IMG/VR virus record: IMGVR_UViG_3300031707_000001
Span: 124,001-188,000 of that record
DNA length: 64,000 nt
Strand: one strand, 5' to 3'
Shown here: in pieces, positions 13,096 through 24,155 of the stretch
How positions within the stretch are numbered: position 1 is the stretch's first letter
Layout: every line of letters starts with the position of its first letter
Notes under the pieces: model-generated
Seen by the model: the letters and a program-made list of their open reading frames with translations, nothing else
Database searches by the model: none
Told to the model about the DNA's origin: nothing
Position numbers and translations under genes: made by a program

Positions 13096-13710
13096 ATGCG
13101 AATGAACAGTAATATGCAAAATTGGGCTAGGGGTCAGGTTCGTGGATATTTCTTCAACCCTAAGACCCTCGAACAGTGGGGCCACTTCCACATTAAGAAT
13201 GTAATCACCTACCGTGCTGCGGACATTATGGCACGCTTGCTTGGTGGAGACTCCAGCTACGTTCCGGGCTACATGGGTTTTGTCTATGGGGCATCAGCAA
13301 CTCCAGGTGCTGCGTTGATTGAACCGCCAACAGACCGGGAACAGACATGGGATAATTTGGCCGTTGAATTGGGCGATCCGGGAGTAACCGGAAATGTATT
13401 GATTACGCCTTTGACTGCGGGGCCAAGCTATGTTGTGGATGGCGATGCAAACAAATACAATGGCAACTCTGTTAACCTAGTAGCGCATACGGGCTCCCGG
13501 TTGGAATATGGTTTTCCTACCAGTTCACCGTATGCCGGCGTGTTGGCTGATGGGAATTACTTTTATCACGCCATGCTAATCACTCGTCTGGTTTCTGGAT
13601 CCACAATTACCTATTTACCTTTTGCCAGAGTTACATTGAAAGGTAGCAGTTATCCACAAAAGTCGGTCGGAAGTGAATTGGCGTTGTTTTGGAACGTTTC
13701 GTTTTTCTAA
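13096..13710 (+). CDS. Hypothetical baseplate/fibre-attachment protein
   Basis: KNVIT...FARVT...K....LALFWNVSF pattern resembles phage tail-fibre attachment domains. Confidence 0.5.
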   Translation: MRMNSNMQNWARGQVRGYFFNPKTLEQWGHFHIKNVITYRAADIMARLLGGDSSYVPGYMGFVYGASATPGAALIEPPTDREQTWDNLAVELGDPGVTGNVLITPLTAGPSYVVDGDANKYNGNSVNLVAHTGSRLEYGFPTSSPYAGVLADGNYFYHAMLITRLVSGSTITYLPFARVTLKGSSYPQKSVGSELALFWNVSFF

Positions 13711-13717
13711 TAATCAC

Positions 13718-14353
13718 ATGAACGTTATCTATTCTATAAGTAATTGTGTTGATGGGCAGACCTATATAGGCCAGTCATGCATAGGTTACAAAGAGCGTTG
13801 GAAGCGTCACCGTTTGCTGTTGAATGCTAATGCACACTTTAATACGCATTTGCAACGTGCATGGAATAAGTATGGAGCAGACAACTTTGAATTTAAGGTG
13901 TTATCACAGAATATTCCTGAATCATGGTTAGATCTTTCAGAGAGAGGTTGGATATTATTTCATAGACATACTTCTGGATGTTATAACCTTACTTCTGGCG
14001 GTAATACCCGAAAGCATTTTGCAGAAGAAACCAAATACAAAATTAGTGTTGCTACGCAGGGTCGGATACCTTGGAATCAGGGTAAACATACGTGCACTGA
14101 AGCACAAAGACAGATGTTGCGAGAACAGATGCTTGGCAATACACATGCTTGTGGTACAATACATTCAGCAGAGTTTTGTCGTCAAGTTAGTTTGCGTAGT
14201 TTGGGTAACAAGTTCTGGGCAGAACGTATCGGATATATGCATTCACCAGCGACCAAACAAAAAATGCAGTTAGCACACATTGGTTGCTGTCATTCAGAAG
14301 AGACCAAACAAAAACTCCGGGACGCTGCAAAACGTCGCTGGGCGAAGGAGTAG
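13718..14353 (+). CDS. Free-standing GIY-YIG homing endonuclease with NUMOD3-like repeats
   Basis: VIYSI...TYIGQS...RWKRH...HFNTHLQRAWNKYG...YNL; C-terminal HSxETKxK repeats. Confidence 0.9.
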   Translation: MNVIYSISNCVDGQTYIGQSCIGYKERWKRHRLLLNANAHFNTHLQRAWNKYGADNFEFKVLSQNIPESWLDLSERGWILFHRHTSGCYNLTSGGNTRKHFAEETKYKISVATQGRIPWNQGKHTCTEAQRQMLREQMLGNTHACGTIHSAEFCRQVSLRSLGNKFWAERIGYMHSPATKQKMQLAHIGCCHSEETKQKLRDAAKRRWAKE

Positions 14354-14358
14354 ATAAA

Positions 14359-17352
14359 ATGAGTCTTTGGGTTGCCGTACATGGCTTGGTTAATAACACG
14401 GATAAGTTGGATGCTGAAACTCTCAATCGGCCCATCTTCGAACTGACGGAACGCACGAACTATCTCTATAATAATCTGCAGTCGTTGATGGCAGCGGGTA
14501 TTTTTGAATCAGTTCGGCTCCCCGATGCTTCCCTGATTACTGTAGGAGCCGCTGCACCGGCCGTAGGAGATTTTGTCTACCTGCATCCCGTGGAAGGGAA
14601 GTATGCCAAAGCACAGGCAGACGTTGATGTTGATACTTTGCTGGCTACTGACTCTTCACTGGCCGTTGGACTGCTGATCTACAAAAATGGCAGCACAGGC
14701 ACAATCGTGCTATATGGAAAAGCTGAACTAACCGGACAGAACTACAGTACGATGTTGGAGTCTGGAGAATCATTCCGCAACGGTCCGTACTTTCTGTCGG
14801 CGTTGACAGCCGGCAAAATGACAGCGGCACCATCTGGCCCTTCGATCTACCTGGGCTATTTCATGCAAGATCCTTTGAACCCGGGCTATGGTGGATATGC
14901 ACTCCTAAGCCCACAATACAAGGATGTAGACGAAGCCCACGTACATCGATCTTATCCATTGTTTGCGCAGCCTGCGGGTACCCAATTTGTATCAGGTCCG
15001 ACACCGACTGATACGCATGCCGTTCTTGGTTTTGAACCCGTTATGCCGGCAGCAGGTGGGGACCATCTTTCTCGCACAGTCATAGCTGGTACCTGGGCGG
15101 GTTTGGAAGATGTTGACTATACGATCTGGTTGTCGGCTTCTTCGGATCCCAACGAGGTATTGGGTGCAACGACCAAACCAACTGATTTCAGCGATGCTTA
15201 CCTGCATTGGTCTTCCAGCGATATCCTGGAAGGCAAAGGCGCCGTGCGTGTATGGTCATATGATACTGTGTATGCATTCGGTACAAAAGGAGCAACCATA
15301 GCTCTACAGAATCCAGATACTACGAGTTGGAATACTCCATATACGTCCGCATCGGACGATGAAGATAAGCGTACATGGATTGTCAATGTGCCAAGTCAAA
15401 CGGCAGGGTGGCTTGCCCGTTATTCTCGATTGTACTTTGACGATCACCCAGCAGTAGACAATAAGTTTTCTTTCATCCTTCAGGGTGGGCCTGCCGACAA
15501 CGGTGACAGCAGGGAATGGGACCAGGTTACAGTAAAGGCCGGAGAACTGCATCGGATTGTATATACTACCAATCCTTCAGCAGCGCAAACGGTGACCATA
15601 GGTACAACGGTATTTGAGTTCAATACGGTACTGACAGTCGGAACCGTTCTTGTTGGTATTGGTACAGATGCCGATGAGTCGTTCCAGAATCTGTTGAATG
15701 CGATCATCAATGCAGGTTTGACGGGTATTGATGCAGCATTGAACATAGACGATGGACATCTCATGGTTTGTACGCCAACTACGACAACCGTATCCACGAC
15801 AGTAACAGGTGCATCAGCTAGTACAGTCTTTACTCCTGGTACTGGTAACCTGGCGTCAGGAACGGCAGCATTCTTGGTATATGATCAATATCACAAGGCA
15901 TTGGTGGCCACAACATCCTATTGGGGTGCTGCAATATACTGGACACCCAAAGCACTCAAGAACAACCTTAGCATTATTCCAATTCCGTACGATAGCGATG
16001 GTGCCGCCGCAACGGCAGATACCGTTGCTGTAGGCGATTACTGGGATGCGGAATATTCAGACGAGGCGCCTGGAGCGTATTTTGTATACTCTATGGGTAT
16101 GCATTCCAGCTTGAATGTATACTACCCACCGCTTCCGATAAGTGCTGCAGGTTTGATTCTGAACGGAGTGGAAATGGATTCCATGGACCAGTTCCCTCTC
16201 GATCCTACATATCGGACTGGTCGCAGCAGCATTTACTGGTATCCAGATTTGTTGGGTTCGGTGCCTTGGCCGAGAGATTGGGTTGATGTCAATAATCCAG
16301 GATCGTTGGCATATCAACAGCATTTGCTGTTCCGTTTCGTCACCATGTCAACCGGAGAAACCGGTTTGGTTACATCATGCCAGCCGGCACCAAATTCACC
16401 GATCAAGATTCTGCGTTGCGGAACAAACGAACCAGCAACATCGGGCGATCTTGCTTTCGATTTGAATCTGGAAATGTCCGAATCGAATGAGAACCTGGCA
16501 GGCTATCAGGTATTCAAACGGGCAACGGGTTCGAAGTTGCGTAAGGGGCCGGTGGTCGAAAAGGTTACATCCCGGGATGGGACGGTTGTAATCAGCTCCA
16601 GCAGCGGGGCGCCATCTGGTCAGGGCATAGTGGATCTAAGCGTAGGCTCCTTCCGCTACGAAGGCGACTTCGAAGAAGTGGCATTGCAGAATGCCAAACA
16701 GGAACTGATTGGCATGTTCCCGTATATTCGGCTGTTAGCTTCAACCAGCATACCATCCGGATTCGTGGCCAAGTTCCGTGTGCCACACACAGCGGGAGAC
16801 GCTACATACAAGGTCATTGTGTACATGACAGTATTTGGGGAAACGAGCATCCCGTATGTTGGTGGAGGATCCAAGCAATATGCAGGCGTTGACTTCTCAT
16901 ACTCTATATTGCCGGATTACACCCCATCCACACCACCAGGCGATCCGACCAATTATCCAGCTTGGAACTCGTTGGATCAAAACCTATCTGTTACCGATCG
17001 GTTAGGAATCATGGCTACAGGTACTCCAATCCATGCGGATATCCCGATCGGTAAATTTGACATCACAGGCGCTACTCCAACCTATACGGCCTATGATCCT
17101 ATGCTGATCCACAATAATCCGGCAGAACTGCCGGCTACCGATGAAGATCGTAAGATTGCCCAGGTATTGGGCAATCCGTTCCCGACAGCAGGAGACCTGG
17201 TATACTGGGATGTTGGCGCCTGGGGCGATCCAGACGTCCGGCCGGGCAGTCTGGTGGCTATCCGTATCCAGCGGTCAAATGCTGTGGCTACGCCGGCGTA
17301 CACTGGTACTTTGGGATTCATAAGTATTCGGTGGCGTCTGGTAGCAGTATAG
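14359..17352 (+). CDS. Large virion structural protein (tail/baseplate-associated)
   Basis: About 1000 aa, beta-rich. N-terminal NRPIFELTERTNYL and GDFVYL...AVGL...YFLSA..AGKMT motifs are seen in phage structural proteins. Confidence 0.6.
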   Translation: MSLWVAVHGLVNNTDKLDAETLNRPIFELTERTNYLYNNLQSLMAAGIFESVRLPDASLITVGAAAPAVGDFVYLHPVEGKYAKAQADVDVDTLLATDSSLAVGLLIYKNGSTGTIVLYGKAELTGQNYSTMLESGESFRNGPYFLSALTAGKMTAAPSGPSIYLGYFMQDPLNPGYGGYALLSPQYKDVDEAHVHRSYPLFAQPAGTQFVSGPTPTDTHAVLGFEPVMPAAGGDHLSRTVIAGTWAGLEDVDYTIWLSASSDPNEVLGATTKPTDFSDAYLHWSSSDILEGKGAVRVWSYDTVYAFGTKGATIALQNPDTTSWNTPYTSASDDEDKRTWIVNVPSQTAGWLARYSRLYFDDHPAVDNKFSFILQGGPADNGDSREWDQVTVKAGELHRIVYTTNPSAAQTVTIGTTVFEFNTVLTVGTVLVGIGTDADESFQNLLNAIINAGLTGIDAALNIDDGHLMVCTPTTTTVSTTVTGASASTVFTPGTGNLASGTAAFLVYDQYHKALVATTSYWGAAIYWTPKALKNNLSIIPIPYDSDGAAATADTVAVGDYWDAEYSDEAPGAYFVYSMGMHSSLNVYYPPLPISAAGLILNGVEMDSMDQFPLDPTYRTGRSSIYWYPDLLGSVPWPRDWVDVNNPGSLAYQQHLLFRFVTMSTGETGLVTSCQPAPNSPIKILRCGTNEPATSGDLAFDLNLEMSESNENLAGYQVFKRATGSKLRKGPVVEKVTSRDGTVVISSSSGAPSGQGIVDLSVGSFRYEGDFEEVALQNAKQELIGMFPYIRLLASTSIPSGFVAKFRVPHTAGDATYKVIVYMTVFGETSIPYVGGGSKQYAGVDFSYSILPDYTPSTPPGDPTNYPAWNSLDQNLSVTDRLGIMATGTPIHADIPIGKFDITGATPTYTAYDPMLIHNNPAELPATDEDRKIAQVLGNPFPTAGDLVYWDVGAWGDPDVRPGSLVAIRIQRSNAVATPAYTGTLGFISIRWRLVAV

Positions 17353-17361
17353 GAGGTTCAT

Positions 17362-17958
17362 ATGCGAGCGATTAGCTTACCCGCTTCATATGGTGTGAAC
17401 TATACCCTTGGTGATATTGGTTTTCAATTCGTAGACAATAGCTTTCTATCGGAAGGTATTGTGTTTTTTACTGGATGGGAAGCCATGTCAGATATCAAAG
17501 TATCACACTCATTCGTGATAACCGGACAAAACGAATGCATCGAATCGTTGAGTAATGGTGTGGATCAATCCACACTAGCGGAACGATTTGCCAGTTCGCA
17601 TACCCACGTAACTATTCGCCGTCCTGTAGATCTTACATTGCAGAGGGGTATGGATATTGTGAAGCGGGCGACATCGCTTTTGGGCACACCATATGATTTT
17701 CGATTGCTTGCTGGCATGATAGCAGCTAACAGTCGCCTGGTGAGATGGTTGCCAACAGTAATTTACATGGCCTATCGCCGCAAGGTTTGTTGGTACGCCC
17801 ATACTGAAGGTCAGTTGATCTGCGATGGCTTGTGTGTGAAGGCTTTGAACGCAGTACCCGAATATGCAGCAGCGTTGCCAGAAGAGTATTATGTTTATGA
17901 TCCGCAGATGCTTTTCGAGGACACAGTTGTATTCAAACCGTGGAAGAAGACTTTATGA
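17362..17958 (+). CDS. Permuted papain-like NlpC/P60 (YiiX/YaeF-like) protein
   Basis: GDI, then SHS (His), then A..LLGTPYDF, then ICDGL (Cys): His-before-Cys permuted order. AGGAGG RBS. Confidence 0.75.
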   Translation: MRAISLPASYGVNYTLGDIGFQFVDNSFLSEGIVFFTGWEAMSDIKVSHSFVITGQNECIESLSNGVDQSTLAERFASSHTHVTIRRPVDLTLQRGMDIVKRATSLLGTPYDFRLLAGMIAANSRLVRWLPTVIYMAYRRKVCWYAHTEGQLICDGLCVKALNAVPEYAAALPEEYYVYDPQMLFEDTVVFKPWKKTL

Positions 17959-18866
17959 GCAACATCAATGCTGAATGGCTCAACGAAAATTCTCTGCGCA
18001 ACTACCCATTTCGGGAAGATGCCCGGCTGATGCCGGTCGACGGTAGCGGCACAGTAATCTCGGACATTCGTATTCCCAACTATCTGGTTGTGGATTTCGT
18101 AATGACGATGCCCAGCGACCTGCCACAACATGTCTACCTGTCTCAACTTTCCAAGGTGGGTAAGCTTTTGACATTTGTCATCGTCGATGGTCTCGGCACG
18201 GTTATTACTACGCTGGCAGTTACCTATCCAACACCTGGCGCAAACCAGGAATATGACTTGGTTGGAAGTTTTGATTACAGCGATGCACGAGGAAAAATTG
18301 TACTGGGCGATCTTTCCCGTATTGACGAGGACCTTCCTGAAGGAATCTACACGTTTCAATTGACCGATGCTGAGTTCGAATTTACCACAGTTCGGCCGGC
18401 CGTTCGTGGCGTTCGCACACTGCAATTGGACAATAATGGTACGCTATCAGGATACATTACTGGACACGTCAAGTTGCTGGCTGGCGACAATGTACGGCTG
18501 ACGTACTTGCCAGCCTACAATGCCATTCGGATCGATGCAATCAGTAGCGGTGGCTTGAACGAGGAGTGCGATTGTGCCACAGTAATCGGGCGGCGAAACA
18601 TTGTGCGTACAATCAACGGTATCGCTTTGGAAGACTTAACAATTACGGGTGATGGGCAATGCGTTACCGTGGAGACGGCAGATAACAAAGTGGTTATCAG
18701 CGATGTTTGCTCCACACCTTGCTGCGGATGTCCGGAGTTGGAATTTCTGACGCAACAGCTCAAGATACTGGATGCCACGTTGTCCAATTTACAGAGCTAT
18801 GCCAATCAGCTCAACAATCAAATCACGACGTTCGTGAGTACGTTCGTCCTTACAATAGGCGCATAA
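17955..18866 (+). CDS. Structural protein, paralogue 1 of the N.N..R.YPF family
   Basis: EWLNENSLRNYPFRE; VRTINGI; PCCGCPEL; C-terminal coiled coil. Confidence 0.6.
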   Translation: MSNINAEWLNENSLRNYPFREDARLMPVDGSGTVISDIRIPNYLVVDFVMTMPSDLPQHVYLSQLSKVGKLLTFVIVDGLGTVITTLAVTYPTPGANQEYDLVGSFDYSDARGKIVLGDLSRIDEDLPEGIYTFQLTDAEFEFTTVRPAVRGVRTLQLDNNGTLSGYITGHVKLLAGDNVRLTYLPAYNAIRIDAISSGGLNEECDCATVIGRRNIVRTINGIALEDLTITGDGQCVTVETADNKVVISDVCSTPCCGCPELEFLTQQLKILDATLSNLQSYANQLNNQITTFVSTFVLTIGA

Positions 18867-18883
18867 CATTTTACGGATAAATA

Positions 18884-18912
18884 TTGACATAAAGCGTTTT
18901 ATGTAATAGACT
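18884..18912 (+). promoter_or_regulatory. Sigma-70 promoter with an internal palindrome
   Basis: TTGACA-17 nt-TAGACT; ACATAAA-gcgt-TTTATGT inverted repeat at 18887-18904. Confidence 0.75.
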
Positions 18913-18918
18913 ATGCTT

Positions 18919-19053
18919 ATGAAGATAATAAATAAGGCCGCCCAAGCACTTGGTAGACTGGGAAAAGGTAGACCTAAAACGCTTTCAAAAGCAGAACGGA
19001 AACGCCGCTCTGATTGGATGATACATCTTAATGGAATTAGAAAATTACAATGA
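18919..19053 (+). CDS. 44-aa basic protein, probably leaderless, coupled to tnpB
   Basis: MKIINKAAQALGRLGKGRPKTLSKAERKRRSDWMIHLNGIRKLQ. ATG lies 6 nt after the -10 box and the stop overlaps the tnpB start (ATGA). Not in the supplied ORF track. Confidence 0.7.
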   Translation: MKIINKAAQALGRLGKGRPKTLSKAERKRRSDWMIHLNGIRKLQ

Positions 19054-20102
19054 TCGTCCGAACACTAAAACTTCGTTTGACAAAAGTGCAAGAAACCATA
19101 CTCAATCAGTGGCTTTGGCATCTTACTGGAGTCTGGAATTGGGCCATTAAGAAGATTGAACACGATGCACACGATAAGATTTATCATTTCAAATTTAACT
19201 TTATTAACCTTGTAGCTAATCATAGTAAATGTATGGGAGTTCCCTCGCACGTTATGCAAGGCATTCTTAGCCAAGCATATTTATCGTGGCAACGTTGTTT
19301 CAAGAAATTGGGCGGAAAACCACACCTTAAAGGACAACGCAATAAGCTTAACTCCATCCCGTTTCCGGATCCAATCAAATTTCCCAAAGATGGCAAAATC
19401 GGTATTCTGGGAATCGGAAAGGTCAGATTTTACAAACAGGATCTTCCTGATGCTAAAATCAAATGTGGGCGTATTGTTCACAGAGCGTCAGGTTGGTACC
19501 TTTGTTTATGGTTTGATTGTGACCACAAGTTTTTTGTAAAGCAAACAGATAAAGCTGTTGGTATCGATCCTGGCTTCAAAACTTTGCTAACGCTTTCCGA
19601 TGGCGTTAAAATTGAGAACCCGAGAGAACTTCATAGGGGTTCTGAACGTTTAGCACAAGCGCAACGAGGCAAACGTAAGCATCTTTCGGCTCGTTTGCAG
19701 GAACGTCAAGCCAATCGTCGGAGAGACCGAAACCACAAGATTTCCAGAAAGCTTGTTGAGAATTACAAGACTATATGCTATTCTGATGACAGTTTCAAAG
19801 GGATGGTAAAGCGTTTTGGAAAAAGCGTTAGCGAGGCAGGACTATCACAATTGGTACAAATGCTTGCGTACAAGTGCCGTACAGGCAGTCGTGAGCTAGT
19901 GCCAGTTGAATCTTTCAATACCACCAAGACCTGCTCGGTTTGCGGAGCCCTAACCGGCCCCACAGGACTTAGCGGGCTTGCGGTAAGGCAATGGACGTGC
20001 TCCGCTTGTGGGGCGGATTTGGACCGGGACATTAATGCGGCCCAAAACGTTTTGTTTGCCGGGCTCGGAGCGAGCCACTTGACAGAAATCCCCGGAGGTT
20101 AA
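19050..20102 (+). CDS. tnpB: TnpB-family RNA-guided endonuclease-like protein (IS200/IS605/IS607 type)
   Basis: N-terminal RTLKLRL...VWNWA, RuvC-I VGIDPG, zinc finger CSVC...CSAC, RuvC-III DRDINAA. No tnpA nearby. Confidence 0.92.
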   Translation: MIVRTLKLRLTKVQETILNQWLWHLTGVWNWAIKKIEHDAHDKIYHFKFNFINLVANHSKCMGVPSHVMQGILSQAYLSWQRCFKKLGGKPHLKGQRNKLNSIPFPDPIKFPKDGKIGILGIGKVRFYKQDLPDAKIKCGRIVHRASGWYLCLWFDCDHKFFVKQTDKAVGIDPGFKTLLTLSDGVKIENPRELHRGSERLAQAQRGKRKHLSARLQERQANRRRDRNHKISRKLVENYKTICYSDDSFKGMVKRFGKSVSEAGLSQLVQMLAYKCRTGSRELVPVESFNTTKTCSVCGALTGPTGLSGLAVRQWTCSACGADLDRDINAAQNVLFAGLGASHLTEIPGG

Positions 20103-20103
20103 T

Positions 20104-21552
20104 ATGGGGGGTGCTCAGTTTCTCACGTCTAATCTGCAGATAGCTTATCCTTTCCGGGAGAACGCTTCCGGATTGGCACGTACGGTTCCATCTACTCACG
20201 GCGGTGCCGCCTCTCTTCCGTTAGATTTCCTTGTCGATGCTTACTTCTCGATTCGAGCAGACGACAGCTTATTGTATCTAAAAGAAATAAGTGCACTTGG
20301 GGGTACACAATATTCACTTGTCTTTGCCAACGTAGGTGGTACTCTGCAAGCATCAGTAACGGTGGATGTGGCGGGTTGGTCGCCTTTGATATCCTACGAT
20401 AGGGTCTCTGTTGAAGACGTATCCCACGGAGTTTATGGCAAACTGGTAATCTACATACCCTCAGCATTGGCTTATCTGGCAGGAACTGTCGGTACAGACA
20501 GCTTCGGCAATGGGTTGCCATTGGAGAATTCTGTAGCGGTACCACGCAATGCTTGTGTAGATACTTTTGAGTTATATGATGTGCTTCCACCTGTGCCCGA
20601 TCCGGATACGCCTGGTCCCATCAACGGAAACGTACGATTGACCAGCGGATATAACGTTGTTACGGAACTTGAAGCTGTAGCAGCCCAGGATTTGACAAAC
20701 ATCAACCTTTCAGCATCGCCTAAAAACCAGGCTCCTTGCACGCACGAGGATTCAACATACGTCAAAGGACTTATGCAGTTGCTTCCGGACGAGAATGGTA
20801 ACATACAGATTACCAGCGGCGATGACGGTTGCTATTCGATCGTCTTTGTATCGGCTACGGTAATGCAGATCCAAGGCACATGTACAGCTTGTTGTACGTG
20901 CGATGACTATAAGAACGTTGCAACCGCTTTGGAGAATTTGCTGATTAGGGCCAAGGCGGCTTTGGATATCTTGGACGATGCACACCACAACCCATTCCAC
21001 GGATATTCGTACGGAGTCGAGTATTTCAACAGCGTGGTGGCGCCGGAACGCATAGTGCCCAAGTTGTTGGCAACTGGGCACGCAGGAGCGGCTTGGTCCC
21101 AGGATCCTACTCTCCGAAGTGGTTCGTTGCAGTTGGCCACAATAACGCTTATTGTTCGACACAACTGGCGCTACAAGTATATGTTGATTACAAACTATAC
21201 GTTTGCTACGTCTGGCATGTCTGAAGTAGTTTCCTTGCGGGAATGGAGCACAACAAAGAATGGAACCGACAAGGTGATCTATAGGGGACCATTGACAAAC
21301 CTGGTTGGATTCAATTACTCTGGTGTGTTTCCGGTACCTCCGCCTTATCCATGGAATGCACTGCAGCAGTTGGGCCGGGGAGAGGAAATCCAGCATCATC
21401 TGTTGATCGAAGTTCCGTACTATGATGCTTCACCTATTACCTGGCATGTTCAGATTTCAGCAACCGCACAAGGCTTCAATGCCGTCGATGGTGGCGGTGC
21501 TCCTATCATTCTTGAATCTATGCCGTTGACGCAAAGCATGTTATTCACATGA
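20104..21552 (+). CDS. Structural protein, paralogue 2
   Basis: QFLTSNLQIAYPFRE; LLPDENGNIQI; CTACCTCDDY. Confidence 0.6.
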   Translation: MGGAQFLTSNLQIAYPFRENASGLARTVPSTHGGAASLPLDFLVDAYFSIRADDSLLYLKEISALGGTQYSLVFANVGGTLQASVTVDVAGWSPLISYDRVSVEDVSHGVYGKLVIYIPSALAYLAGTVGTDSFGNGLPLENSVAVPRNACVDTFELYDVLPPVPDPDTPGPINGNVRLTSGYNVVTELEAVAAQDLTNINLSASPKNQAPCTHEDSTYVKGLMQLLPDENGNIQITSGDDGCYSIVFVSATVMQIQGTCTACCTCDDYKNVATALENLLIRAKAALDILDDAHHNPFHGYSYGVEYFNSVVAPERIVPKLLATGHAGAAWSQDPTLRSGSLQLATITLIVRHNWRYKYMLITNYTFATSGMSEVVSLREWSTTKNGTDKVIYRGPLTNLVGFNYSGVFPVPPPYPWNALQQLGRGEEIQHHLLIEVPYYDASPITWHVQISATAQGFNAVDGGGAPIILESMPLTQSMLFT

Positions 21553-22250
21553 GAGATGTATCCTACATACAGTGGTGCAACGAGAACGCTGGTCGGGCTT
21601 ATCCGTTAGCAGAAACGGCTTCTCGAAAGGACAATGATGGAAACGTCATGCCTGACAACATTCTTCTGGACATGTGTTTGTTGGTGCCACCTATCCATGC
21701 CGATTGCTTTGTCAGTTCGATGCGTGTGACAGACAACATCATTTCCTTTGGTATCAGTTCGTCTACCAGCGGGTTGTTTGTGTTTACAGCTGCCTGGGCC
21801 AATATACAGTCAGGCGATTTTTCTGAATGGCTGTCTTATCCGTTGTCGCCGGTAATCGAAGACATCAGCGGATGGGTTGTACTGAATCGGAAAGAACCCG
21901 GCATGACAGGATACTGGAGGTTTTCGTCTAGCATACAGAGCGGTATTGAGACCCGGGCACTTAGGATCGTGGATAGTTTGCCCATTCGTAGTATCATTCG
22001 GAAGGATATGAATCCCTTGTTCTACATGGGTGGGGTAGTCAAGTTGCAGAGCGGCTCAGGAGTACAGATTGTCCGGGACGACGTCAACCCACAAAAGATA
22101 CTTGTGAAATTGACTCCGGACGCTAAAACGGCCATGCTTAGCCCATGCAATAAGCCGGCCGACGCAAAAATTTGTGGCGTGCCACCATTGCGGTCAATCA
22201 ATGGCGTTTGTCCTGATGAAAACGGCAAGATCACCATAAGGTTTGAATAA
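21549..22250 (+). CDS. Structural protein, paralogue 3
   Basis: QWCNENAGRAYPLAE; LRSINGVCPDENGKITI. Confidence 0.6.
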   Translation: MRDVSYIQWCNENAGRAYPLAETASRKDNDGNVMPDNILLDMCLLVPPIHADCFVSSMRVTDNIISFGISSSTSGLFVFTAAWANIQSGDFSEWLSYPLSPVIEDISGWVVLNRKEPGMTGYWRFSSSIQSGIETRALRIVDSLPIRSIIRKDMNPLFYMGGVVKLQSGSGVQIVRDDVNPQKILVKLTPDAKTAMLSPCNKPADAKICGVPPLRSINGVCPDENGKITIRFE

Positions 22251-23377
22251 TGCAACCCATACTATTAGGCGAATATAGAAATCAGAACAGCCGGCGAAAC
22301 TATCCGTTCCGGGATGGTGCTTCGTTGACGGATCAGACTGGTGTAGTGTTGCCAACTGATTTCTTGATTGATGCCTACATCTTTCCCATTGTCCTTCGGG
22401 AATCTGACACCGATCTTCGGGTAACCCAACCTATTGGCGACAGCATTTTTATATCCAAGATCGATCTCACTGAAAGAAAGATCTACATCAACAGCGTGTT
22501 AAGTGGCGTGGTATACGGCATTGCCGAATTCGAAGAGGGCGTGTATACAGCCTACGTCTATGAAGAGCCCAACTACCATCGGCAGATCGGCGTATTGGTA
22601 TTTGGAGACGGCTTGACTGCCGTTCTTCACGGAGCACCTGTACGCACCTTTGTGCCGTGGGCAACATCGTTTACTCCTTCAACCTTTACTATTCTGGACC
22701 AGGTTGGTGTACGAGGCTTTCTACTGGAAGATGGGTCGCTGATAACCGGTGACGTGATCATCGAAGGCCAAGATGGCATTGAGATAACCAGTTACATTAG
22801 TGGTGGCAGTAATACGTTGAAGTTTGAAGTAACAGGGCAGGCACCAGCCAAAGAAGCATGTGCTCCAAGTCAATGTCCGTTTATCAAGGAAATCTGCTTC
22901 GAACGGGCGGACGATAGTGAATTCATGATTGCTCAGCAGAGTACCAATACGGTCAATCTCAATGCGTTTGGGTTTACGTTGGACGATATCTGTGCTGCAC
23001 AGAAGGCACAGGTATTGCCCGATGAAGATGGCAATCTGCCGGCAGCGCCCAAAGCTGGGGATGATCCTTGTGGTACGATACCTACGCCGCCGGTACCGCC
23101 TACGCCTGTTGTGACGGCGCCGATTTGTTTCACCTTGGAGGGTTTGGGTGGAAACATCTTCATCATGACACCGTCAGCCCCTGGCGCTCGTAATCCGGTG
23201 GGCGTGAAGGAAGTAGATCAAAGTGGAAGTCAGTCGCTGGTACGTATCATTCAGGACAAGCCAATAGCTGGGTACCAGGAAATTACTGAACTGACCAATC
23301 AGGTAGCTACACCGCCTTATCTGGCGGGTGGGCTTGTTGTCTATTTCAAGGGCCTCAGAACCCAGAAGAGGAATTAA
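22250..23377 (+). CDS. Structural protein, paralogue 4
   Basis: EYRNQNSRRNYPFRD; LPTDFLIDA; LPDEDGN. Confidence 0.6.
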   Translation: MQPILLGEYRNQNSRRNYPFRDGASLTDQTGVVLPTDFLIDAYIFPIVLRESDTDLRVTQPIGDSIFISKIDLTERKIYINSVLSGVVYGIAEFEEGVYTAYVYEEPNYHRQIGVLVFGDGLTAVLHGAPVRTFVPWATSFTPSTFTILDQVGVRGFLLEDGSLITGDVIIEGQDGIEITSYISGGSNTLKFEVTGQAPAKEACAPSQCPFIKEICFERADDSEFMIAQQSTNTVNLNAFGFTLDDICAAQKAQVLPDEDGNLPAAPKAGDDPCGTIPTPPVPPTPVVTAPICFTLEGLGGNIFIMTPSAPGARNPVGVKEVDQSGSQSLVRIIQDKPIAGYQEITELTNQVATPPYLAGGLVVYFKGLRTQKRN

Positions 23378-23378
23378 C

Positions 23379-24155
23379 ATGCCACGTCAAGTTGAATGGT
23401 TGAATGCAAATGCCTACCGACGTTATCCGTTCGTCGAAGATCAGCAACTGGTATCTGGAAGCTTGACCATGGACGATTCCGTGATCCTGGACTTCAGTGG
23501 TGTCAGTTATCTTCAAGATCCTCGCCCAGTGGCCCTGCAGAGCGTTATGATTATACCAGGTACTCCCAAACAGGGCGTCTTCACTTTCATGTATGTAGGT
23601 GGTCCCGCCGTGTACAATCCATTCAGTTTTATTGTACCGGAGAATGCGGCTGTGCCTTACCAGGCTGTCTTGCACACCGTTGAGGCACATTATTTGGTTT
23701 GTGTTTTTGGGGAGGGACTACAGTCTTTTCTTCAGAATGCTCCAGGAACGTACGTATTTGCCGGACTCCCACAGATCGAGCCGGCGTTGGTTTCCTTTCA
23801 ACCTAATCACCGGGTAACGAATATAGTAGGAACCGGAGCGGGAAGTATAGACCTCGGTAACGGCATGATCCTTCTTGAAGAAGGACATAACTGTCAGATA
23901 GACCTCAACTGGTATTTGAATGCCATTAGTATTTCAGCTATACGTGGAGCTGGCGCAGGGATTGATTGCGCTCCAGTTACAACTGGTGTATTATTGTGCG
24001 AGGATGTTCTCTTGCGCATTAACGGAATGCACGGGAACGATCAAGGGGATTTTATCTTAGGCGGGGGCCCTGGTGTGGAAGTAATTGGCGTGCCAGACGA
24101 GCATAAGGTCATCATTAGGGCCAAGACGTTTGACGAACGCCAGTGTGGAGATTAG
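23379..24155 (+). CDS. Structural protein, paralogue 5
   Basis: EWLNANAYRRYPFVE; LLRINGMHGNDQGDFIL. Confidence 0.6.
   Translation: MPRQVEWLNANAYRRYPFVEDQQLVSGSLTMDDSVILDFSGVSYLQDPRPVALQSVMIIPGTPKQGVFTFMYVGGPAVYNPFSFIVPENAAVPYQAVLHTVEAHYLVCVFGEGLQSFLQNAPGTYVFAGLPQIEPALVSFQPNHRVTNIVGTGAGSIDLGNGMILLEEGHNCQIDLNWYLNAISISAIRGAGAGIDCAPVTTGVLLCEDVLLRINGMHGNDQGDFILGGGPGVEVIGVPDEHKVIIRAKTFDERQCGD

What the first reader, a model, noticed from the sequence alone, without database searches (positions are those of the whole stretch)
18867..20125. TnpB without TnpA, behaving like an RNA-guided homing endonuclease
Seen: tnpB with its own promoter lies between two paralogous structural genes. There is no transposase in the window, and only 1 nt separates its stop from the next ATG. 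Established: TnpB omegaRNA overlaps the 3' end of tnpB and takes its guide from the right flank. Inference: the scaffold lies inside the coding sequence (ending near GAAATCCC, about 20087-20094) and the guide would be the RBS and start of the next structural gene. It would then target the empty allele in co-infecting phages.
Basis: partly seen in the sequence, partly recalled or inferred. Interest (0 to 1): 0.65.

Follow-up and report, generated by a model that had tools for sequence, protein, structure and literature searches.

The report
Stranded TnpB element feeding a phage gene
A 1.25-kb TnpB insertion sequence with an intact guide RNA is stuck in a large phage between two structural genes; it has lost its mobility signals and now supplies the start of the next gene, so it is a locked-in selfish element rather than a shown homing nuclease.

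Summary
Window 19050-20102 encodes a 350-aa TnpB. It has its own promoter, no TnpA in the window, and sits 1 nt before the next ATG, between two paralogous structural genes.

Six related phage lineages have the two genes 4-5 nt apart and no tnpB, so this is an insertion (18867-20118).

Comparison with about 100 related copies defines the family:
- target motif (TAM) TGAA;
- left end: C + spacer + hairpin + GTTAGG + promoter;
- right end: GGAATC-hairpin-GAGGTTCAA;
- a roughly 130-nt omegaRNA with five covarying helices and a pseudoknot.

A covariance model built without the window matches 19998-20118 (77 bits). The scaffold therefore runs through the RBS and the ATG, which lie in the last hairpin's loop. 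The guide starts at 20119 (codon 6), not at the RBS.

The left-end hairpin is deleted. The 23 nt of the ancestral site, including the gene's own start, are gone. The gene's first five codons come from the element.

The three IS-free alleles with DNA lack TGAA and mismatch the guide at 2-6 of 16 positions. Homing is therefore possible but unsupported.

The family is nearly virus-only, often replaces TnpA with miniproteins, and repeatedly donates start codons to downstream genes.

The parts
17940..18866 (+). Upstream structural gene (308-aa ORF; called as 303 aa). It forms the left flank of the insertion, with stop TAA at 18864-18866.
   Evidence: It is 76-87% identical to the 304-aa genes of IS-free relatives, right up to the last residue.
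18867..18883 (+). Left-end remnant (CATTTTACGGATAAATA). It keeps the first base C and the spacer. The TnpA-binding hairpin and GTTAGG motif (about 45 nt in relatives) are missing.
   Evidence: Intact relatives read TGAA|C + 11-15 nt + GCAAT-hairpin-GTTAGG + about 10 nt + TTGACA. The spacer of the IS-free alleles starts with A, so C18867 is not phage DNA.
18884..18912 (+). Element-borne sigma-70-like promoter: TTGACA, 17 nt, TAGACT.
   Evidence: The -35 hexamer is invariant in six aligned left ends.
18913..19053 (+). 46-aa basic miniprotein ORF (NKAAQALGRLGKGRPKTLSKAERKRR...). It overlaps the tnpB start by ATGA and occupies the position that TnpA holds in autonomous copies.
   Evidence: Homologues sit in the same position in L003, L035, L057, L080, L083 and L105. 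It matches no Pfam or PHROG family.
19050..20102 (+). tnpB, 350 aa. RuvC-I is D173, RuvC-III is D327 (DRDIN), and the zinc-finger cysteines are C295/C298/C317/C320. The RuvC-II Glu position is Ser245, as in the whole family.
   Evidence: It deviates at only 1 of 121 family-conserved positions.
19987..20118 (+). omegaRNA scaffold: long-range helix 19987-19991/20056-20060; hairpins 20002-20016, 20021-20043 and 20062-20076; terminal hairpin 20089-20111; tail to 20118.
   Evidence: A covariance model built without the window hits 19998-20118 at 77.3 bits, E 5e-20, over its full length. The family shows covariation, with 27 of 32 pairs changed on both sides and 0 of 500 shuffles as high.
20068..20116 (+). 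Pseudoknot: loop GAGC 20068-20071 pairs with tail GCUC 20113-20116, just 5' of the guide.
   Evidence: 97.7% of cells are paired in 54 sequences, and 3 of 4 pairs show compensatory changes. The window shares the GAGC/GCUC variant with L002. This is analogous to the pseudoknot of ISDra2 omegaRNA (PMC10097598).
20089..20111 (+). Terminal hairpin, formerly the right-end TnpA hairpin. The outer stem UCCCC/GGGGG is kept and the inner stem is recoded. The 13-nt loop 20094-20106 holds the SD GGAGG (20094-20098), the tnpB stop (20100-20102) and the ATG of the next gene (20104-20106).
   Evidence: A PWM test of the last 12 nt against the 34-nt right-end class gives p about 7.5e-4.
20104..20118 (+). First five codons (MGGAQ) of the downstream structural gene, encoded by the element's right end.
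   Evidence: Six of seven relatives begin M-x-x-G-[TV]-[ED]-[FY]-LTSN, and the seventh (P0127) begins MNEYLTSN. Similarity to the window starts exactly at 20119.
20119..20134 (+). Predicted fixed guide and self-copy of the target: TTTCTCACGTCTAATC (codons 6-11, FLTSN). The length is assumed to be about 16 nt.
   Evidence: It is the sequence directly 3' of the scaffold end. It has no other match with 2 or fewer mismatches in the window.
20104..21552 (+). Downstream structural gene (482 aa). It is a paralogue of the upstream gene and forms the right flank.

Best explanation
Window 18867-20118 is a single-copy IS200/IS605-family element of a TnpB lineage found almost only in viruses. It is stranded in a roughly 211-kb phage.

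Shown:
- It is an insertion relative to six related phage lineages.
- It has no TnpA and its left-end hairpin is deleted.
- The 23 nt of the ancestral site are missing. These comprised the 5-nt spacer, the gene's own ATG and five further codons, ending at the place where a TAM would sit.
- The right end now provides the SD, the ATG and the first five codons of the downstream structural gene.
- The TnpB protein and every helix of the omegaRNA, including the pseudoknot next to the guide, are intact.

Inferred:
- The element can no longer be excised or transposed.
- It cannot be lost without destroying the start of the next gene, so it is locked in.
- From its own promoter it probably still makes the miniprotein, TnpB and an omegaRNA with a fixed guide (20119 to about 20134).
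- Such a complex could cut only IS-free genomes that carry a TGAA-type TAM directly before a near-perfect match. None of the sampled relatives does.
- Any homing or exclusion would therefore be confined to near-identical IS-free siblings and is not needed to explain persistence.
For: Insertion: six IS-free lineages keep the two genes 4-5 nt apart. The junction DNA is in L025, L201 and L202.

Family anatomy, from about 100 loci: right-end consensus; left end and TAM. The TAM is TGAA because joining the flanks after TGAA and after TTCAA restores ORFs of 131+109 codons (L005) and 186+200 codons (L045), and the native deformylase N-terminus in L096.

omegaRNA: covariation and the covariance-model hit at 77 bits ending at 20118. 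The pseudoknot has a compensatory pair in the window.

N-terminus: the break in similarity falls at 20118/20119.

Protein constraint: 1 of 121 conserved positions deviates, which equals the family median.

No TnpA and a single copy.

Stability: the same arrangement is seen in 8 contigs.

Right-end-donated starts recur in L096 (deformylase), L085 (patatin) and L030.
Against: Nothing here shows expression, RNA binding or cleavage.

The canonical RuvC-II Glu is a Ser. It is family-wide and also present in copies with TnpA, intact ends and TAM, and such rearranged sites are described as probably active (PMC10691335).

The route to the present structure is not resolved. It needs an insertion at a non-canonical TAM (AGAA, as at L038, or ATAA) plus two deletions.

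A rival reading cannot be fully excluded: the right-end hairpin was deleted, so the right end stops at GGAGGTTAA (20102) and the guide starts at 20103. It fails the pseudoknot test and the N-terminus test.

An intact tnpB with no sign of decay is also what active selection for nuclease function would give.
Confidence: 0.5

Rival explanations
1. TnpB with its omegaRNA acts as a TnpA-independent RNA-guided homing or exclusion nuclease. In co-infections it cuts the IS-free allele of sibling phages, and repair copies the element, or the rival genome is destroyed. This would be why the module is kept intact.
For: TnpB and the omegaRNA are intact, including the pseudoknot. The guide lies in a conserved coding stretch (FLTSN). 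IS-free relatives with about 90% identical flanks occur in the same sample series. The self allele has no TAM before the target, reading CTCAG. The family is nearly virus-only, and most copies lack TnpA yet are widespread. The concept is established for plasmids and proposed for phages (PMC13565253, PMC10690162).
Against: All three IS-free alleles with DNA lack TGAA at the TAM position (AGAG, AGAA, AGAA) and mismatch the guide at 2 (positions 6 and 9), 6 and 5 of 16 positions. The insertion is found in one of seven lineages only. The base before TGAA is never C in 13 left ends, but it would be C here.
Confidence: 0.25
2. An inert relic. The element is dead cargo. TnpB is inactive (no RuvC-II Glu) or the omegaRNA no longer works because its last hairpin was recoded. 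Only the right end matters, as the start of the next gene.
For: S245 sits at the Glu position. The inner stem of the terminal hairpin is lost and its loop has grown to 13 nt. Both TnpA hairpins are degraded. G+C of 0.38-0.44 against 0.48-0.50 in the phage suggests a fairly recent arrival that has had little time to decay.
Against: S245 is invariant in 25 aligned family members, a family that includes autonomous, TAM-flanked copies. The ORF is intact with 120 of 121 conserved positions kept. All 5 consensus pairs of the terminal stem and all 4 pseudoknot pairs are kept although the loop was rewritten.
Confidence: 0.13
3. An ordinary non-autonomous IS (IS1341-type) that is still mobilised in trans by a TnpA in the phage or its host.
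For: Relatives at 59-75% identity carry a Y1 TnpA directly upstream. Most family copies lack TnpA.
Against: The left-end hairpin and GTTAGG motif are absent, the TAM is absent (ATAA), and the right-end hairpin keeps only 5 bp. There is one copy in 210.7 kb. No cognate TnpA was found. Precise excision would leave the next gene without a start.
Confidence: 0.05
4. A domesticated regulator. TnpB-omegaRNA acts without cutting. Either it is TldR-like, or binding its scaffold covers the SD and AUG in the hairpin loop and so gates translation of the structural gene.
For: The SD, stop and AUG lie inside the scaffold's last hairpin. The guide matches the phage's own gene. Nuclease-dead TnpB repressors exist (PMC10705468).
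Against: RuvC-I and RuvC-III acids, the zinc finger and the full C-terminus are present, unlike TldR. There is no TAM next to the self-target. The same protein features occur in mobile copies.
Confidence: 0.05

Closest known systems
ISDra2 / IS608-type IS200/IS605 elements with TnpB and omegaRNA (Karvelis 2021, PMC8612924; Nakagawa 2023, PMC10097598)
   Same: The domain set is the same. The omegaRNA overlaps the tnpB 3' end, has a hairpin before the guide and a pseudoknot formed by the last bases before the guide, and takes its guide from the right flank. The family has a 4-nt target motif at the left end and a right end finishing in TCAA, as IS608 does (the IS608 motifs are from my own knowledge). 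A Y1 TnpA is present in autonomous relatives.
   Different: This copy has no TnpA and no left-end hairpin, and its TAM is lost. The RuvC-II Glu is replaced by Ser. Protein identity to ISDra2 TnpB is low. The lineage is almost confined to viral contigs.
TnpB-only (IS1341-type) non-autonomous elements, and the RuvC-II-rearranged TnpB clades of Altae-Tran 2023 (PMC10691335)
   Same: tnpB stands alone with an omegaRNA. The catalytic-site rearrangement is conserved across a clade, and some such clades are reported as virus-specific. Immobilised single copies are described.
   Different: I could not assign it to a named clade. In this lineage the slot upstream of tnpB holds one of two miniproteins instead of TnpA, and the right end serves as a translation start for the neighbouring gene. 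I did not find either feature described.
Free-standing phage homing endonuclease genes (Seg/Mob of T4; 'intronless homing') and 'transposon non-restorative homing' (review PMC13565253)
   Same: A nuclease gene sits between two conserved phage genes, is absent from related phages and has its own promoter. The proposed target is the nuclease-free allele of a co-infecting relative.
   Different: Recognition would be by RNA plus a TAM. The available nuclease-free alleles do not meet the TAM-plus-guide rule, and there is no sign of spread to other lineages. A true protein homing endonuclease (GIY-YIG) sits 4.5 kb upstream in the same module.
TldR (nuclease-dead TnpB-like repressors; PMC10705468)
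   Same: It is an immobilised TnpB relative next to a structural gene, with a guide matching a gene 5' region.
   Different: TldRs lack RuvC residues and the C-terminal part. Here RuvC-I, RuvC-III and the zinc finger are intact.

Membership tests
IS200/IS605 TnpB (OMEGA RNA-guided nuclease) | OrfB_IS605 RuvC core plus the C-terminal zinc-ribbon (TNB) domain | tested here: met
   Pfam PF01385 at 1e-10 and PF07282 at 2.5e-19. NCBIfam NF040570 at 197 bits against a cut-off of 100. PDB ISDra2 TnpB at 2.5e-18.
IS200/IS605 TnpB (OMEGA RNA-guided nuclease) | RuvC D-E-D catalytic triad | tested here: inconclusive
   D173 and D327 align with D191 and D361 of ISDra2 TnpB, but E278 aligns with S245. S245, D247 and E262 are invariant in the family. 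Rearranged RuvC-II sites are described as probably active (PMC10691335). No coordinates were available to test for a substitute acid.
IS200/IS605 TnpB (OMEGA RNA-guided nuclease) | Structured omegaRNA overlapping the tnpB 3' end, with a pseudoknot next to the guide | tested here: met
   Family: 32 pairs, 93.5% paired, 27 with changes on both sides, 0 of 500 shuffles as high. Window: covariance-model hit at 77.3 bits, 19998-20118, with all pseudoknot pairs kept.
IS200/IS605 TnpB (OMEGA RNA-guided nuclease) | RNA-guided, TAM-dependent DNA cleavage | not testable with these tools
   This needs expression and a cleavage or interference assay.
Mobile IS200/IS605 element | Subterminal hairpins at the left and right ends for Y1 TnpA | tested here: not met
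   Only 17 nt lie between the flank and the -35 hexamer, where relatives have about 65 nt including the hairpin. The right-end hairpin is reduced to 5 bp with a 13-nt loop.
Mobile IS200/IS605 element | Target motif (TAM) directly 5' of the left end | tested here: not met
   The family TAM is TGAA. The window has ATAA before C18867.
Mobile IS200/IS605 element | A TnpA in cis or in trans, and multiple copies | tested here: not met
   No TnpA in the window. The contig is not among the 80 best TnpA hits. There is one tnpB locus in the contig. The 147 kb outside the window were not read directly.
Homing endonuclease behaviour (non-restorative homing) | Nuclease-free alleles of the same site exist in related genomes | tested here: met
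   Six lineages: P0122/L202, P0123, P0124, P0125/L025, P0131/L201 and P0133.
Homing endonuclease behaviour (non-restorative homing) | The nuclease-free allele carries a cleavable target (TAM plus guide match) that the occupied allele lacks | tested here: not met
   L201: AGAG with 2 mismatches. L202: AGAA with 6. L025: AGAA with 5. Closer siblings were not available.
Homing endonuclease behaviour (non-restorative homing) | The same insertion is found in diverged genetic backgrounds (evidence of spread) | tested here: not met
   Only the window's own lineage carries it: 8 contigs with an identical protein.
TldR (nuclease-dead TnpB-like repressor) | Loss of RuvC catalytic residues and C-terminal truncation | tested here: not met
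   The protein is full length with D173, D327 and four zinc-finger cysteines.

The most novel reading that the evidence does not exclude
This virus-restricted TnpB lineage may be built to live inside densely coded phage genomes. Its right end carries an SD-like tail and an outward-facing (A/G)UG GGG AGG UUC AA| start, in phase with the AA of the TGAA target. Insertions at xTG-AAn, including ATG-AAn gene starts, would then regenerate a translatable gene. TnpA is often swapped for a miniprotein, and the TnpB-omegaRNA is kept as a weapon or homing device against IS-free sibling phages. The window would be a matured case in which the element has fused with an essential structural gene.
Probability: 0.2. 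Interest if true: 0.7.

Novelty: new variant of a known kind. Interest (0 to 1): 0.45.

Why it matters
TnpB elements in phages are common, and the homing idea is already published, so the bare finding is ordinary.

Three things are less ordinary. First, the element and an essential structural gene have merged: the gene's ribosome-binding site, start codon and first five codons lie inside the guide RNA's last hairpin. Second, this donation of start codons by the right end recurs in independent insertions of the same lineage. Third, the lineage is almost virus-only and replaces the transposase with small unknown proteins.

If the nuclease is active, this is a natural, well-defined test case for RNA-guided competition between phages. 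The guide, the candidate TAM and real IS-free alleles are all known.

Tried and rejected
- DNA search of 17000-22500 against 50,697 phage records found no match, so the phage has no sequenced close relative.
- Rfam at gathering thresholds found nothing in the window.
- A second 350-aa ORF at 72-1124 is unrelated to TnpB. There are no long repeats or a second copy.
- Single-protein scans of IMG/VR with the flanking proteins returned only the window's own contig. An alignment-based scan added one distant locus.
Its right end could therefore not be compared.
- I first read the right end as a hairpin deletion ending at GGAGGTTAA (20102). I rejected this because of the collinear covariance-model alignment, the PWM test, the pseudoknot pair and the N-terminus break.
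- I first took the TAM as TGAAC. I corrected it to TGAA after the empty-site reconstructions. L056 fits one extra base better, but weakly.
- A single-sequence RNA fold of 19975-20138 is no better than shuffles (z 0.22), so it is uninformative for this G+C-rich stretch.
- The predicted complex of TnpB with the miniprotein gave no verdict. It is not evidence either way.
- The genome-contig scan gave only 10 MAG contigs from unrelated phyla, so there is no host assignment.
- Structure prediction was not run, because the tool returns no coordinates and so could not settle the RuvC-II question.
Full report
**What is there**

The ORF at 19050-20102 (+) encodes a 350-aa protein. It carries the OrfB_IS605 and Cas12f1-like TNB domains. 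It scores 197 bits against NCBIfam guided_TnpB and aligns with ISDra2 TnpB structures.

- Its stop (20100-20102) lies 1 nt before the ATG (20104) of a 482-aa gene.
- Upstream, after the stop of a 308-aa gene (18864-18866), come 17 nt, then a promoter-like site (TTGACA 18884-18889, 17 nt, TAGACT 18907-18912), then a 46-aa ORF (18913-19053) that overlaps the tnpB start by ATGA.
- The flanking genes are paralogous, at 24% identity over 286 aa.
- G+C falls to 0.38-0.44 inside the element, against 0.48-0.50 outside.
- The window is part of IMG/VR contig UViG_3300031707_000001 (210,732 bp), which holds a single tnpB locus.
- The identical protein with the same neighbours is seen on 8 contigs.
- No cognate Y1 TnpA is detectable in the window or among the best IMG/VR TnpA hits.

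**It is an insertion**

Relatives of the downstream protein (51-70% identical) and of the upstream protein (76-87% identical) come from six other lineages. In all of them the about-300-aa gene (298-306 aa) is followed 4-5 nt later by the about-480-aa gene (468-489 aa), with no tnpB. Three of these have DNA:
- L201 and L202 read ...GGCGCATAA ATGCT ATG GCT GCT GGA ACA GAG/GAA | TTT CTT ACT TCT AAT CTG....
- L025 is similar.

The window reads ...GGCGCATAA [C ATTTT ... GGTGCTCAG] TTT CTC ACG TCT AAT CTG.... The element (18867-20118) thus stands in place of 23 nt of the ancestral site: the spacer, the gene's own ATG and five further codons.

Six of the seven relatives begin M-x-x-G-[TV]-[ED]-[FY]-LTSN, down to 32% identity; the seventh (P0127) begins MNEYLTSN. 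The window's protein begins MGGAQ-FLTSN. Similarity starts exactly at 20119.

**The family**

The protein search found 2,546 relatives at E up to 1e-10. The nearest are 67-80% identical, all about 350 aa, and almost all from metagenomes. I fetched 21 loci from IMG/VR and 80 from metagenomes.

In one genome for each of 185,579 species, only 10 loci appear. All are MAG contigs from unrelated phyla. The lineage is therefore essentially viral.

Directly upstream of tnpB, always with an ATGA overlap, lies one of three genes:
- a Y1 TnpA of about 130 aa;
- a zinc-ribbon miniprotein of about 45 aa;
- a basic miniprotein of 42-48 aa, as in the window.

Neither miniprotein matches Pfam or PHROGs.

Right ends read GGAATC, a G+C-rich hairpin, then GAGGTTCAA followed by the flank. 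Left ends read TGAA|C, 11-15 nt, GCAAT-hairpin-GTTAGG, about 10 nt, then the TTGACA promoter.

Joining the left flank after TGAA to the right flank after TTCAA restores reading frames across the joint:
- 131+109 codons in L005;
- 186+200 codons in L045;
- 65+88 codons in L013;
- the native N-terminus MSRLLNKIVRD... of a peptide deformylase in L096.

The target motif is therefore TGAA. Variants AGAA, TAAA and TGAG occur. The base before it is A, T or G in 13 left ends.

**The omegaRNA**

An alignment of the last 170 nt of 53 elements plus the window gives a consensus of five helices. I added a pseudoknot between the loop of the fourth hairpin (GAAC) and the tail just before the flank (GUUC).

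Counted on the alignment, 93.5% of cells pair and 27 of 32 pairs have changes on both sides. No shuffle of 500 and no slid register comes close. The pseudoknot is 97.7% paired and has compensatory variants: GACG/CGUC, GAUG/CAUC, GAAU/AUUC, GGAC/GUCC and GAGC/GCUC. It corresponds to the pseudoknot seen in the ISDra2 omegaRNA structure (PMC10097598).

**The window's copy**

A covariance model built without the window matches the window once, at 19998-20118. The score is 77.3 bits, E 5e-20, over the model's full length.

- All helices are kept.
- The pseudoknot is G20068-C20071 with G20113-C20116. It is the GAGC/GCUC variant, shared with L002.
- The terminal hairpin keeps the five consensus outer pairs (U20089-C20093 with G20107-G20111), but its inner stem has been rewritten.
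- Its 13-nt loop GGAGGUUAAUAUG contains the SD, the tnpB stop and the next gene's AUG.
- The last 12 nt score in the top 0.075% of all 12-mers of the window against the profile of 34-nt right ends.

The scaffold therefore ends at 20118 and the guide starts at 20119. That is 26 nt too early.

I first favoured a reading in which the hairpin had been deleted and the right end stopped at GGAGGTTAA (20102). The pseudoknot, the collinear alignment and the N-terminus break argue against it.

**State of the element**

- The left end keeps only its first 17 nt. The hairpin and GTTAGG are gone.
- The motif before it is ATAA, not TGAA.
- The right-end hairpin is reduced.
- There is no TnpA and no second copy.

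It therefore cannot move by the family's normal route. Precise loss would leave the next gene without a start.

In contrast, TnpB deviates at only 1 of 121 positions that are at least 95% conserved in 119 relatives. That equals the family median.

The canonical RuvC-II Glu aligns with Ser245. This Ser is invariant in the 25 aligned family members, and the family includes copies with TnpA, TAM and intact ends. Conserved RuvC-II rearrangements, some virus-specific, are described as probably active (PMC10691335).

**Does it home?**

The concept that a TnpB could convert the orthologous IS-free site of a co-infecting phage or plasmid is already stated as 'non-restorative homing' (PMC13565253; see also PMC10690162). 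I found no experimental phage case.

Here the self allele is safe, because CTCAG precedes the target. The three IS-free alleles with DNA read as follows at the TAM position and against the 16-nt guide:

| Allele | TAM position | Guide mismatches (of 16) |
|---|---|---|
| L201 | AGAG | 2 (positions 6 and 9) |
| L202 | AGAA | 6 |
| L025 | AGAA | 5 |

Only one of seven lineages carries the element. These relatives are about 90% identical in the flanks and come from the same sample series, so encounters are plausible. By the family's rules, however, they are poor targets.

Homing into near-identical siblings cannot be excluded, and the intact module is compatible with it. It is not needed to explain persistence.

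**How it may have arisen (inferred)**

AGAA is a TAM variant used at L038. An insertion after ACA GAA| would put the right end directly before TTT CTC.

Many family right ends carry (A/G)TG GGG AGG TTC AA| in the 3' arm of the hairpin. In the short-linker subgroup the tnpB stop lies in the loop. In L096 (deformylase, Pfam position 10 at residue 12), L085 (patatin, position 1 at residue 8), L030 and L076, the only start that gives a full-length product is this right-end codon. A right-end start could therefore have rescued the split gene at once.

Later events would be loss of the orphaned 23 nt (AA microhomology), loss of the left-end hairpin, and tuning of the loop into a strong SD and ATG. 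An insertion in the spacer followed by a deletion on the right is an alternative. The data do not decide between them.

**Verdict**

This is a real, well-defined TnpB-omegaRNA element of a known kind. It is immobilised and fused to the start of a phage structural gene. The homing interpretation remains an untested possibility that the available IS-free alleles do not support.

Noticed in passing
window 18913-19053; L003 5876-6004; L080 242-373; L005 5864-6004; L043 181-321 and others: In this TnpB lineage the slot directly upstream of tnpB (ATGA overlap) holds a Y1 TnpA, a roughly 45-aa zinc-ribbon miniprotein (CxRCGHxW...CPKCxSPYWD), or a 42-48-aa basic miniprotein (NKAAQALGRLxKG..KTL..E..RR). 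Neither miniprotein matches Pfam or PHROGs, and I found no description of them.
   Followed up: partly
L096 2589-3209; L085 1190-1771; L030 2585-3691; L076 2579-2911; window 20104-20118: The right end of this IS family carries an outward-facing start, (A/G)TG GGG AGG TTC AA|, and an SD-like tail (GGAGGT). In several independent insertions it is the only start that gives a full-length downstream protein (deformylase, patatin, BNR protein, lipoprotein-like). In L096, joining the flanks restores the native N-terminus, and the right-end start is in phase with it.
   Followed up: partly
window 13673-14353: A GIY-YIG/NUMOD3 homing-endonuclease gene sits between the 213-aa and 1022-aa structural genes. 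The related contig carrying P0123 has the 204-aa and 996-aa genes adjacent, so this is a second mobile insertion in the same structural module.
   Followed up: partly
window 17940-24155: A run of five paralogous genes (308, 482, 233, 375 and 275 aa) share an N-terminal motif (N..RNYPFRE / AYPFRENA) and match no Pfam or PHROG family. They are conserved in order in related roughly 200-kb phage contigs.
   Followed up: no
L041 1182-1351; L009 7062-7102: Some family copies carry duplicated right-end pieces. L041 has two right-end hairpin units about 100 nt apart, and L009 has a GGTTCA-GGTTCAA repeat. This suggests that right ends can be reiterated.
   Followed up: no
L090 about 1000-1009 (same element as L106 2612-4053): The stop codon of the gene upstream of this autonomous copy lies inside the element's left end (CTT GAA|CAG TAA). 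Left ends can therefore also finish a neighbouring gene.
   Followed up: no
window 17362-17958: A 198-aa protein has a weak match to the permuted papain-like amidase family C92 (E 2.8e-4, below the cut-off). It lies among the structural genes and may be a tail-associated lysin.
   Followed up: no
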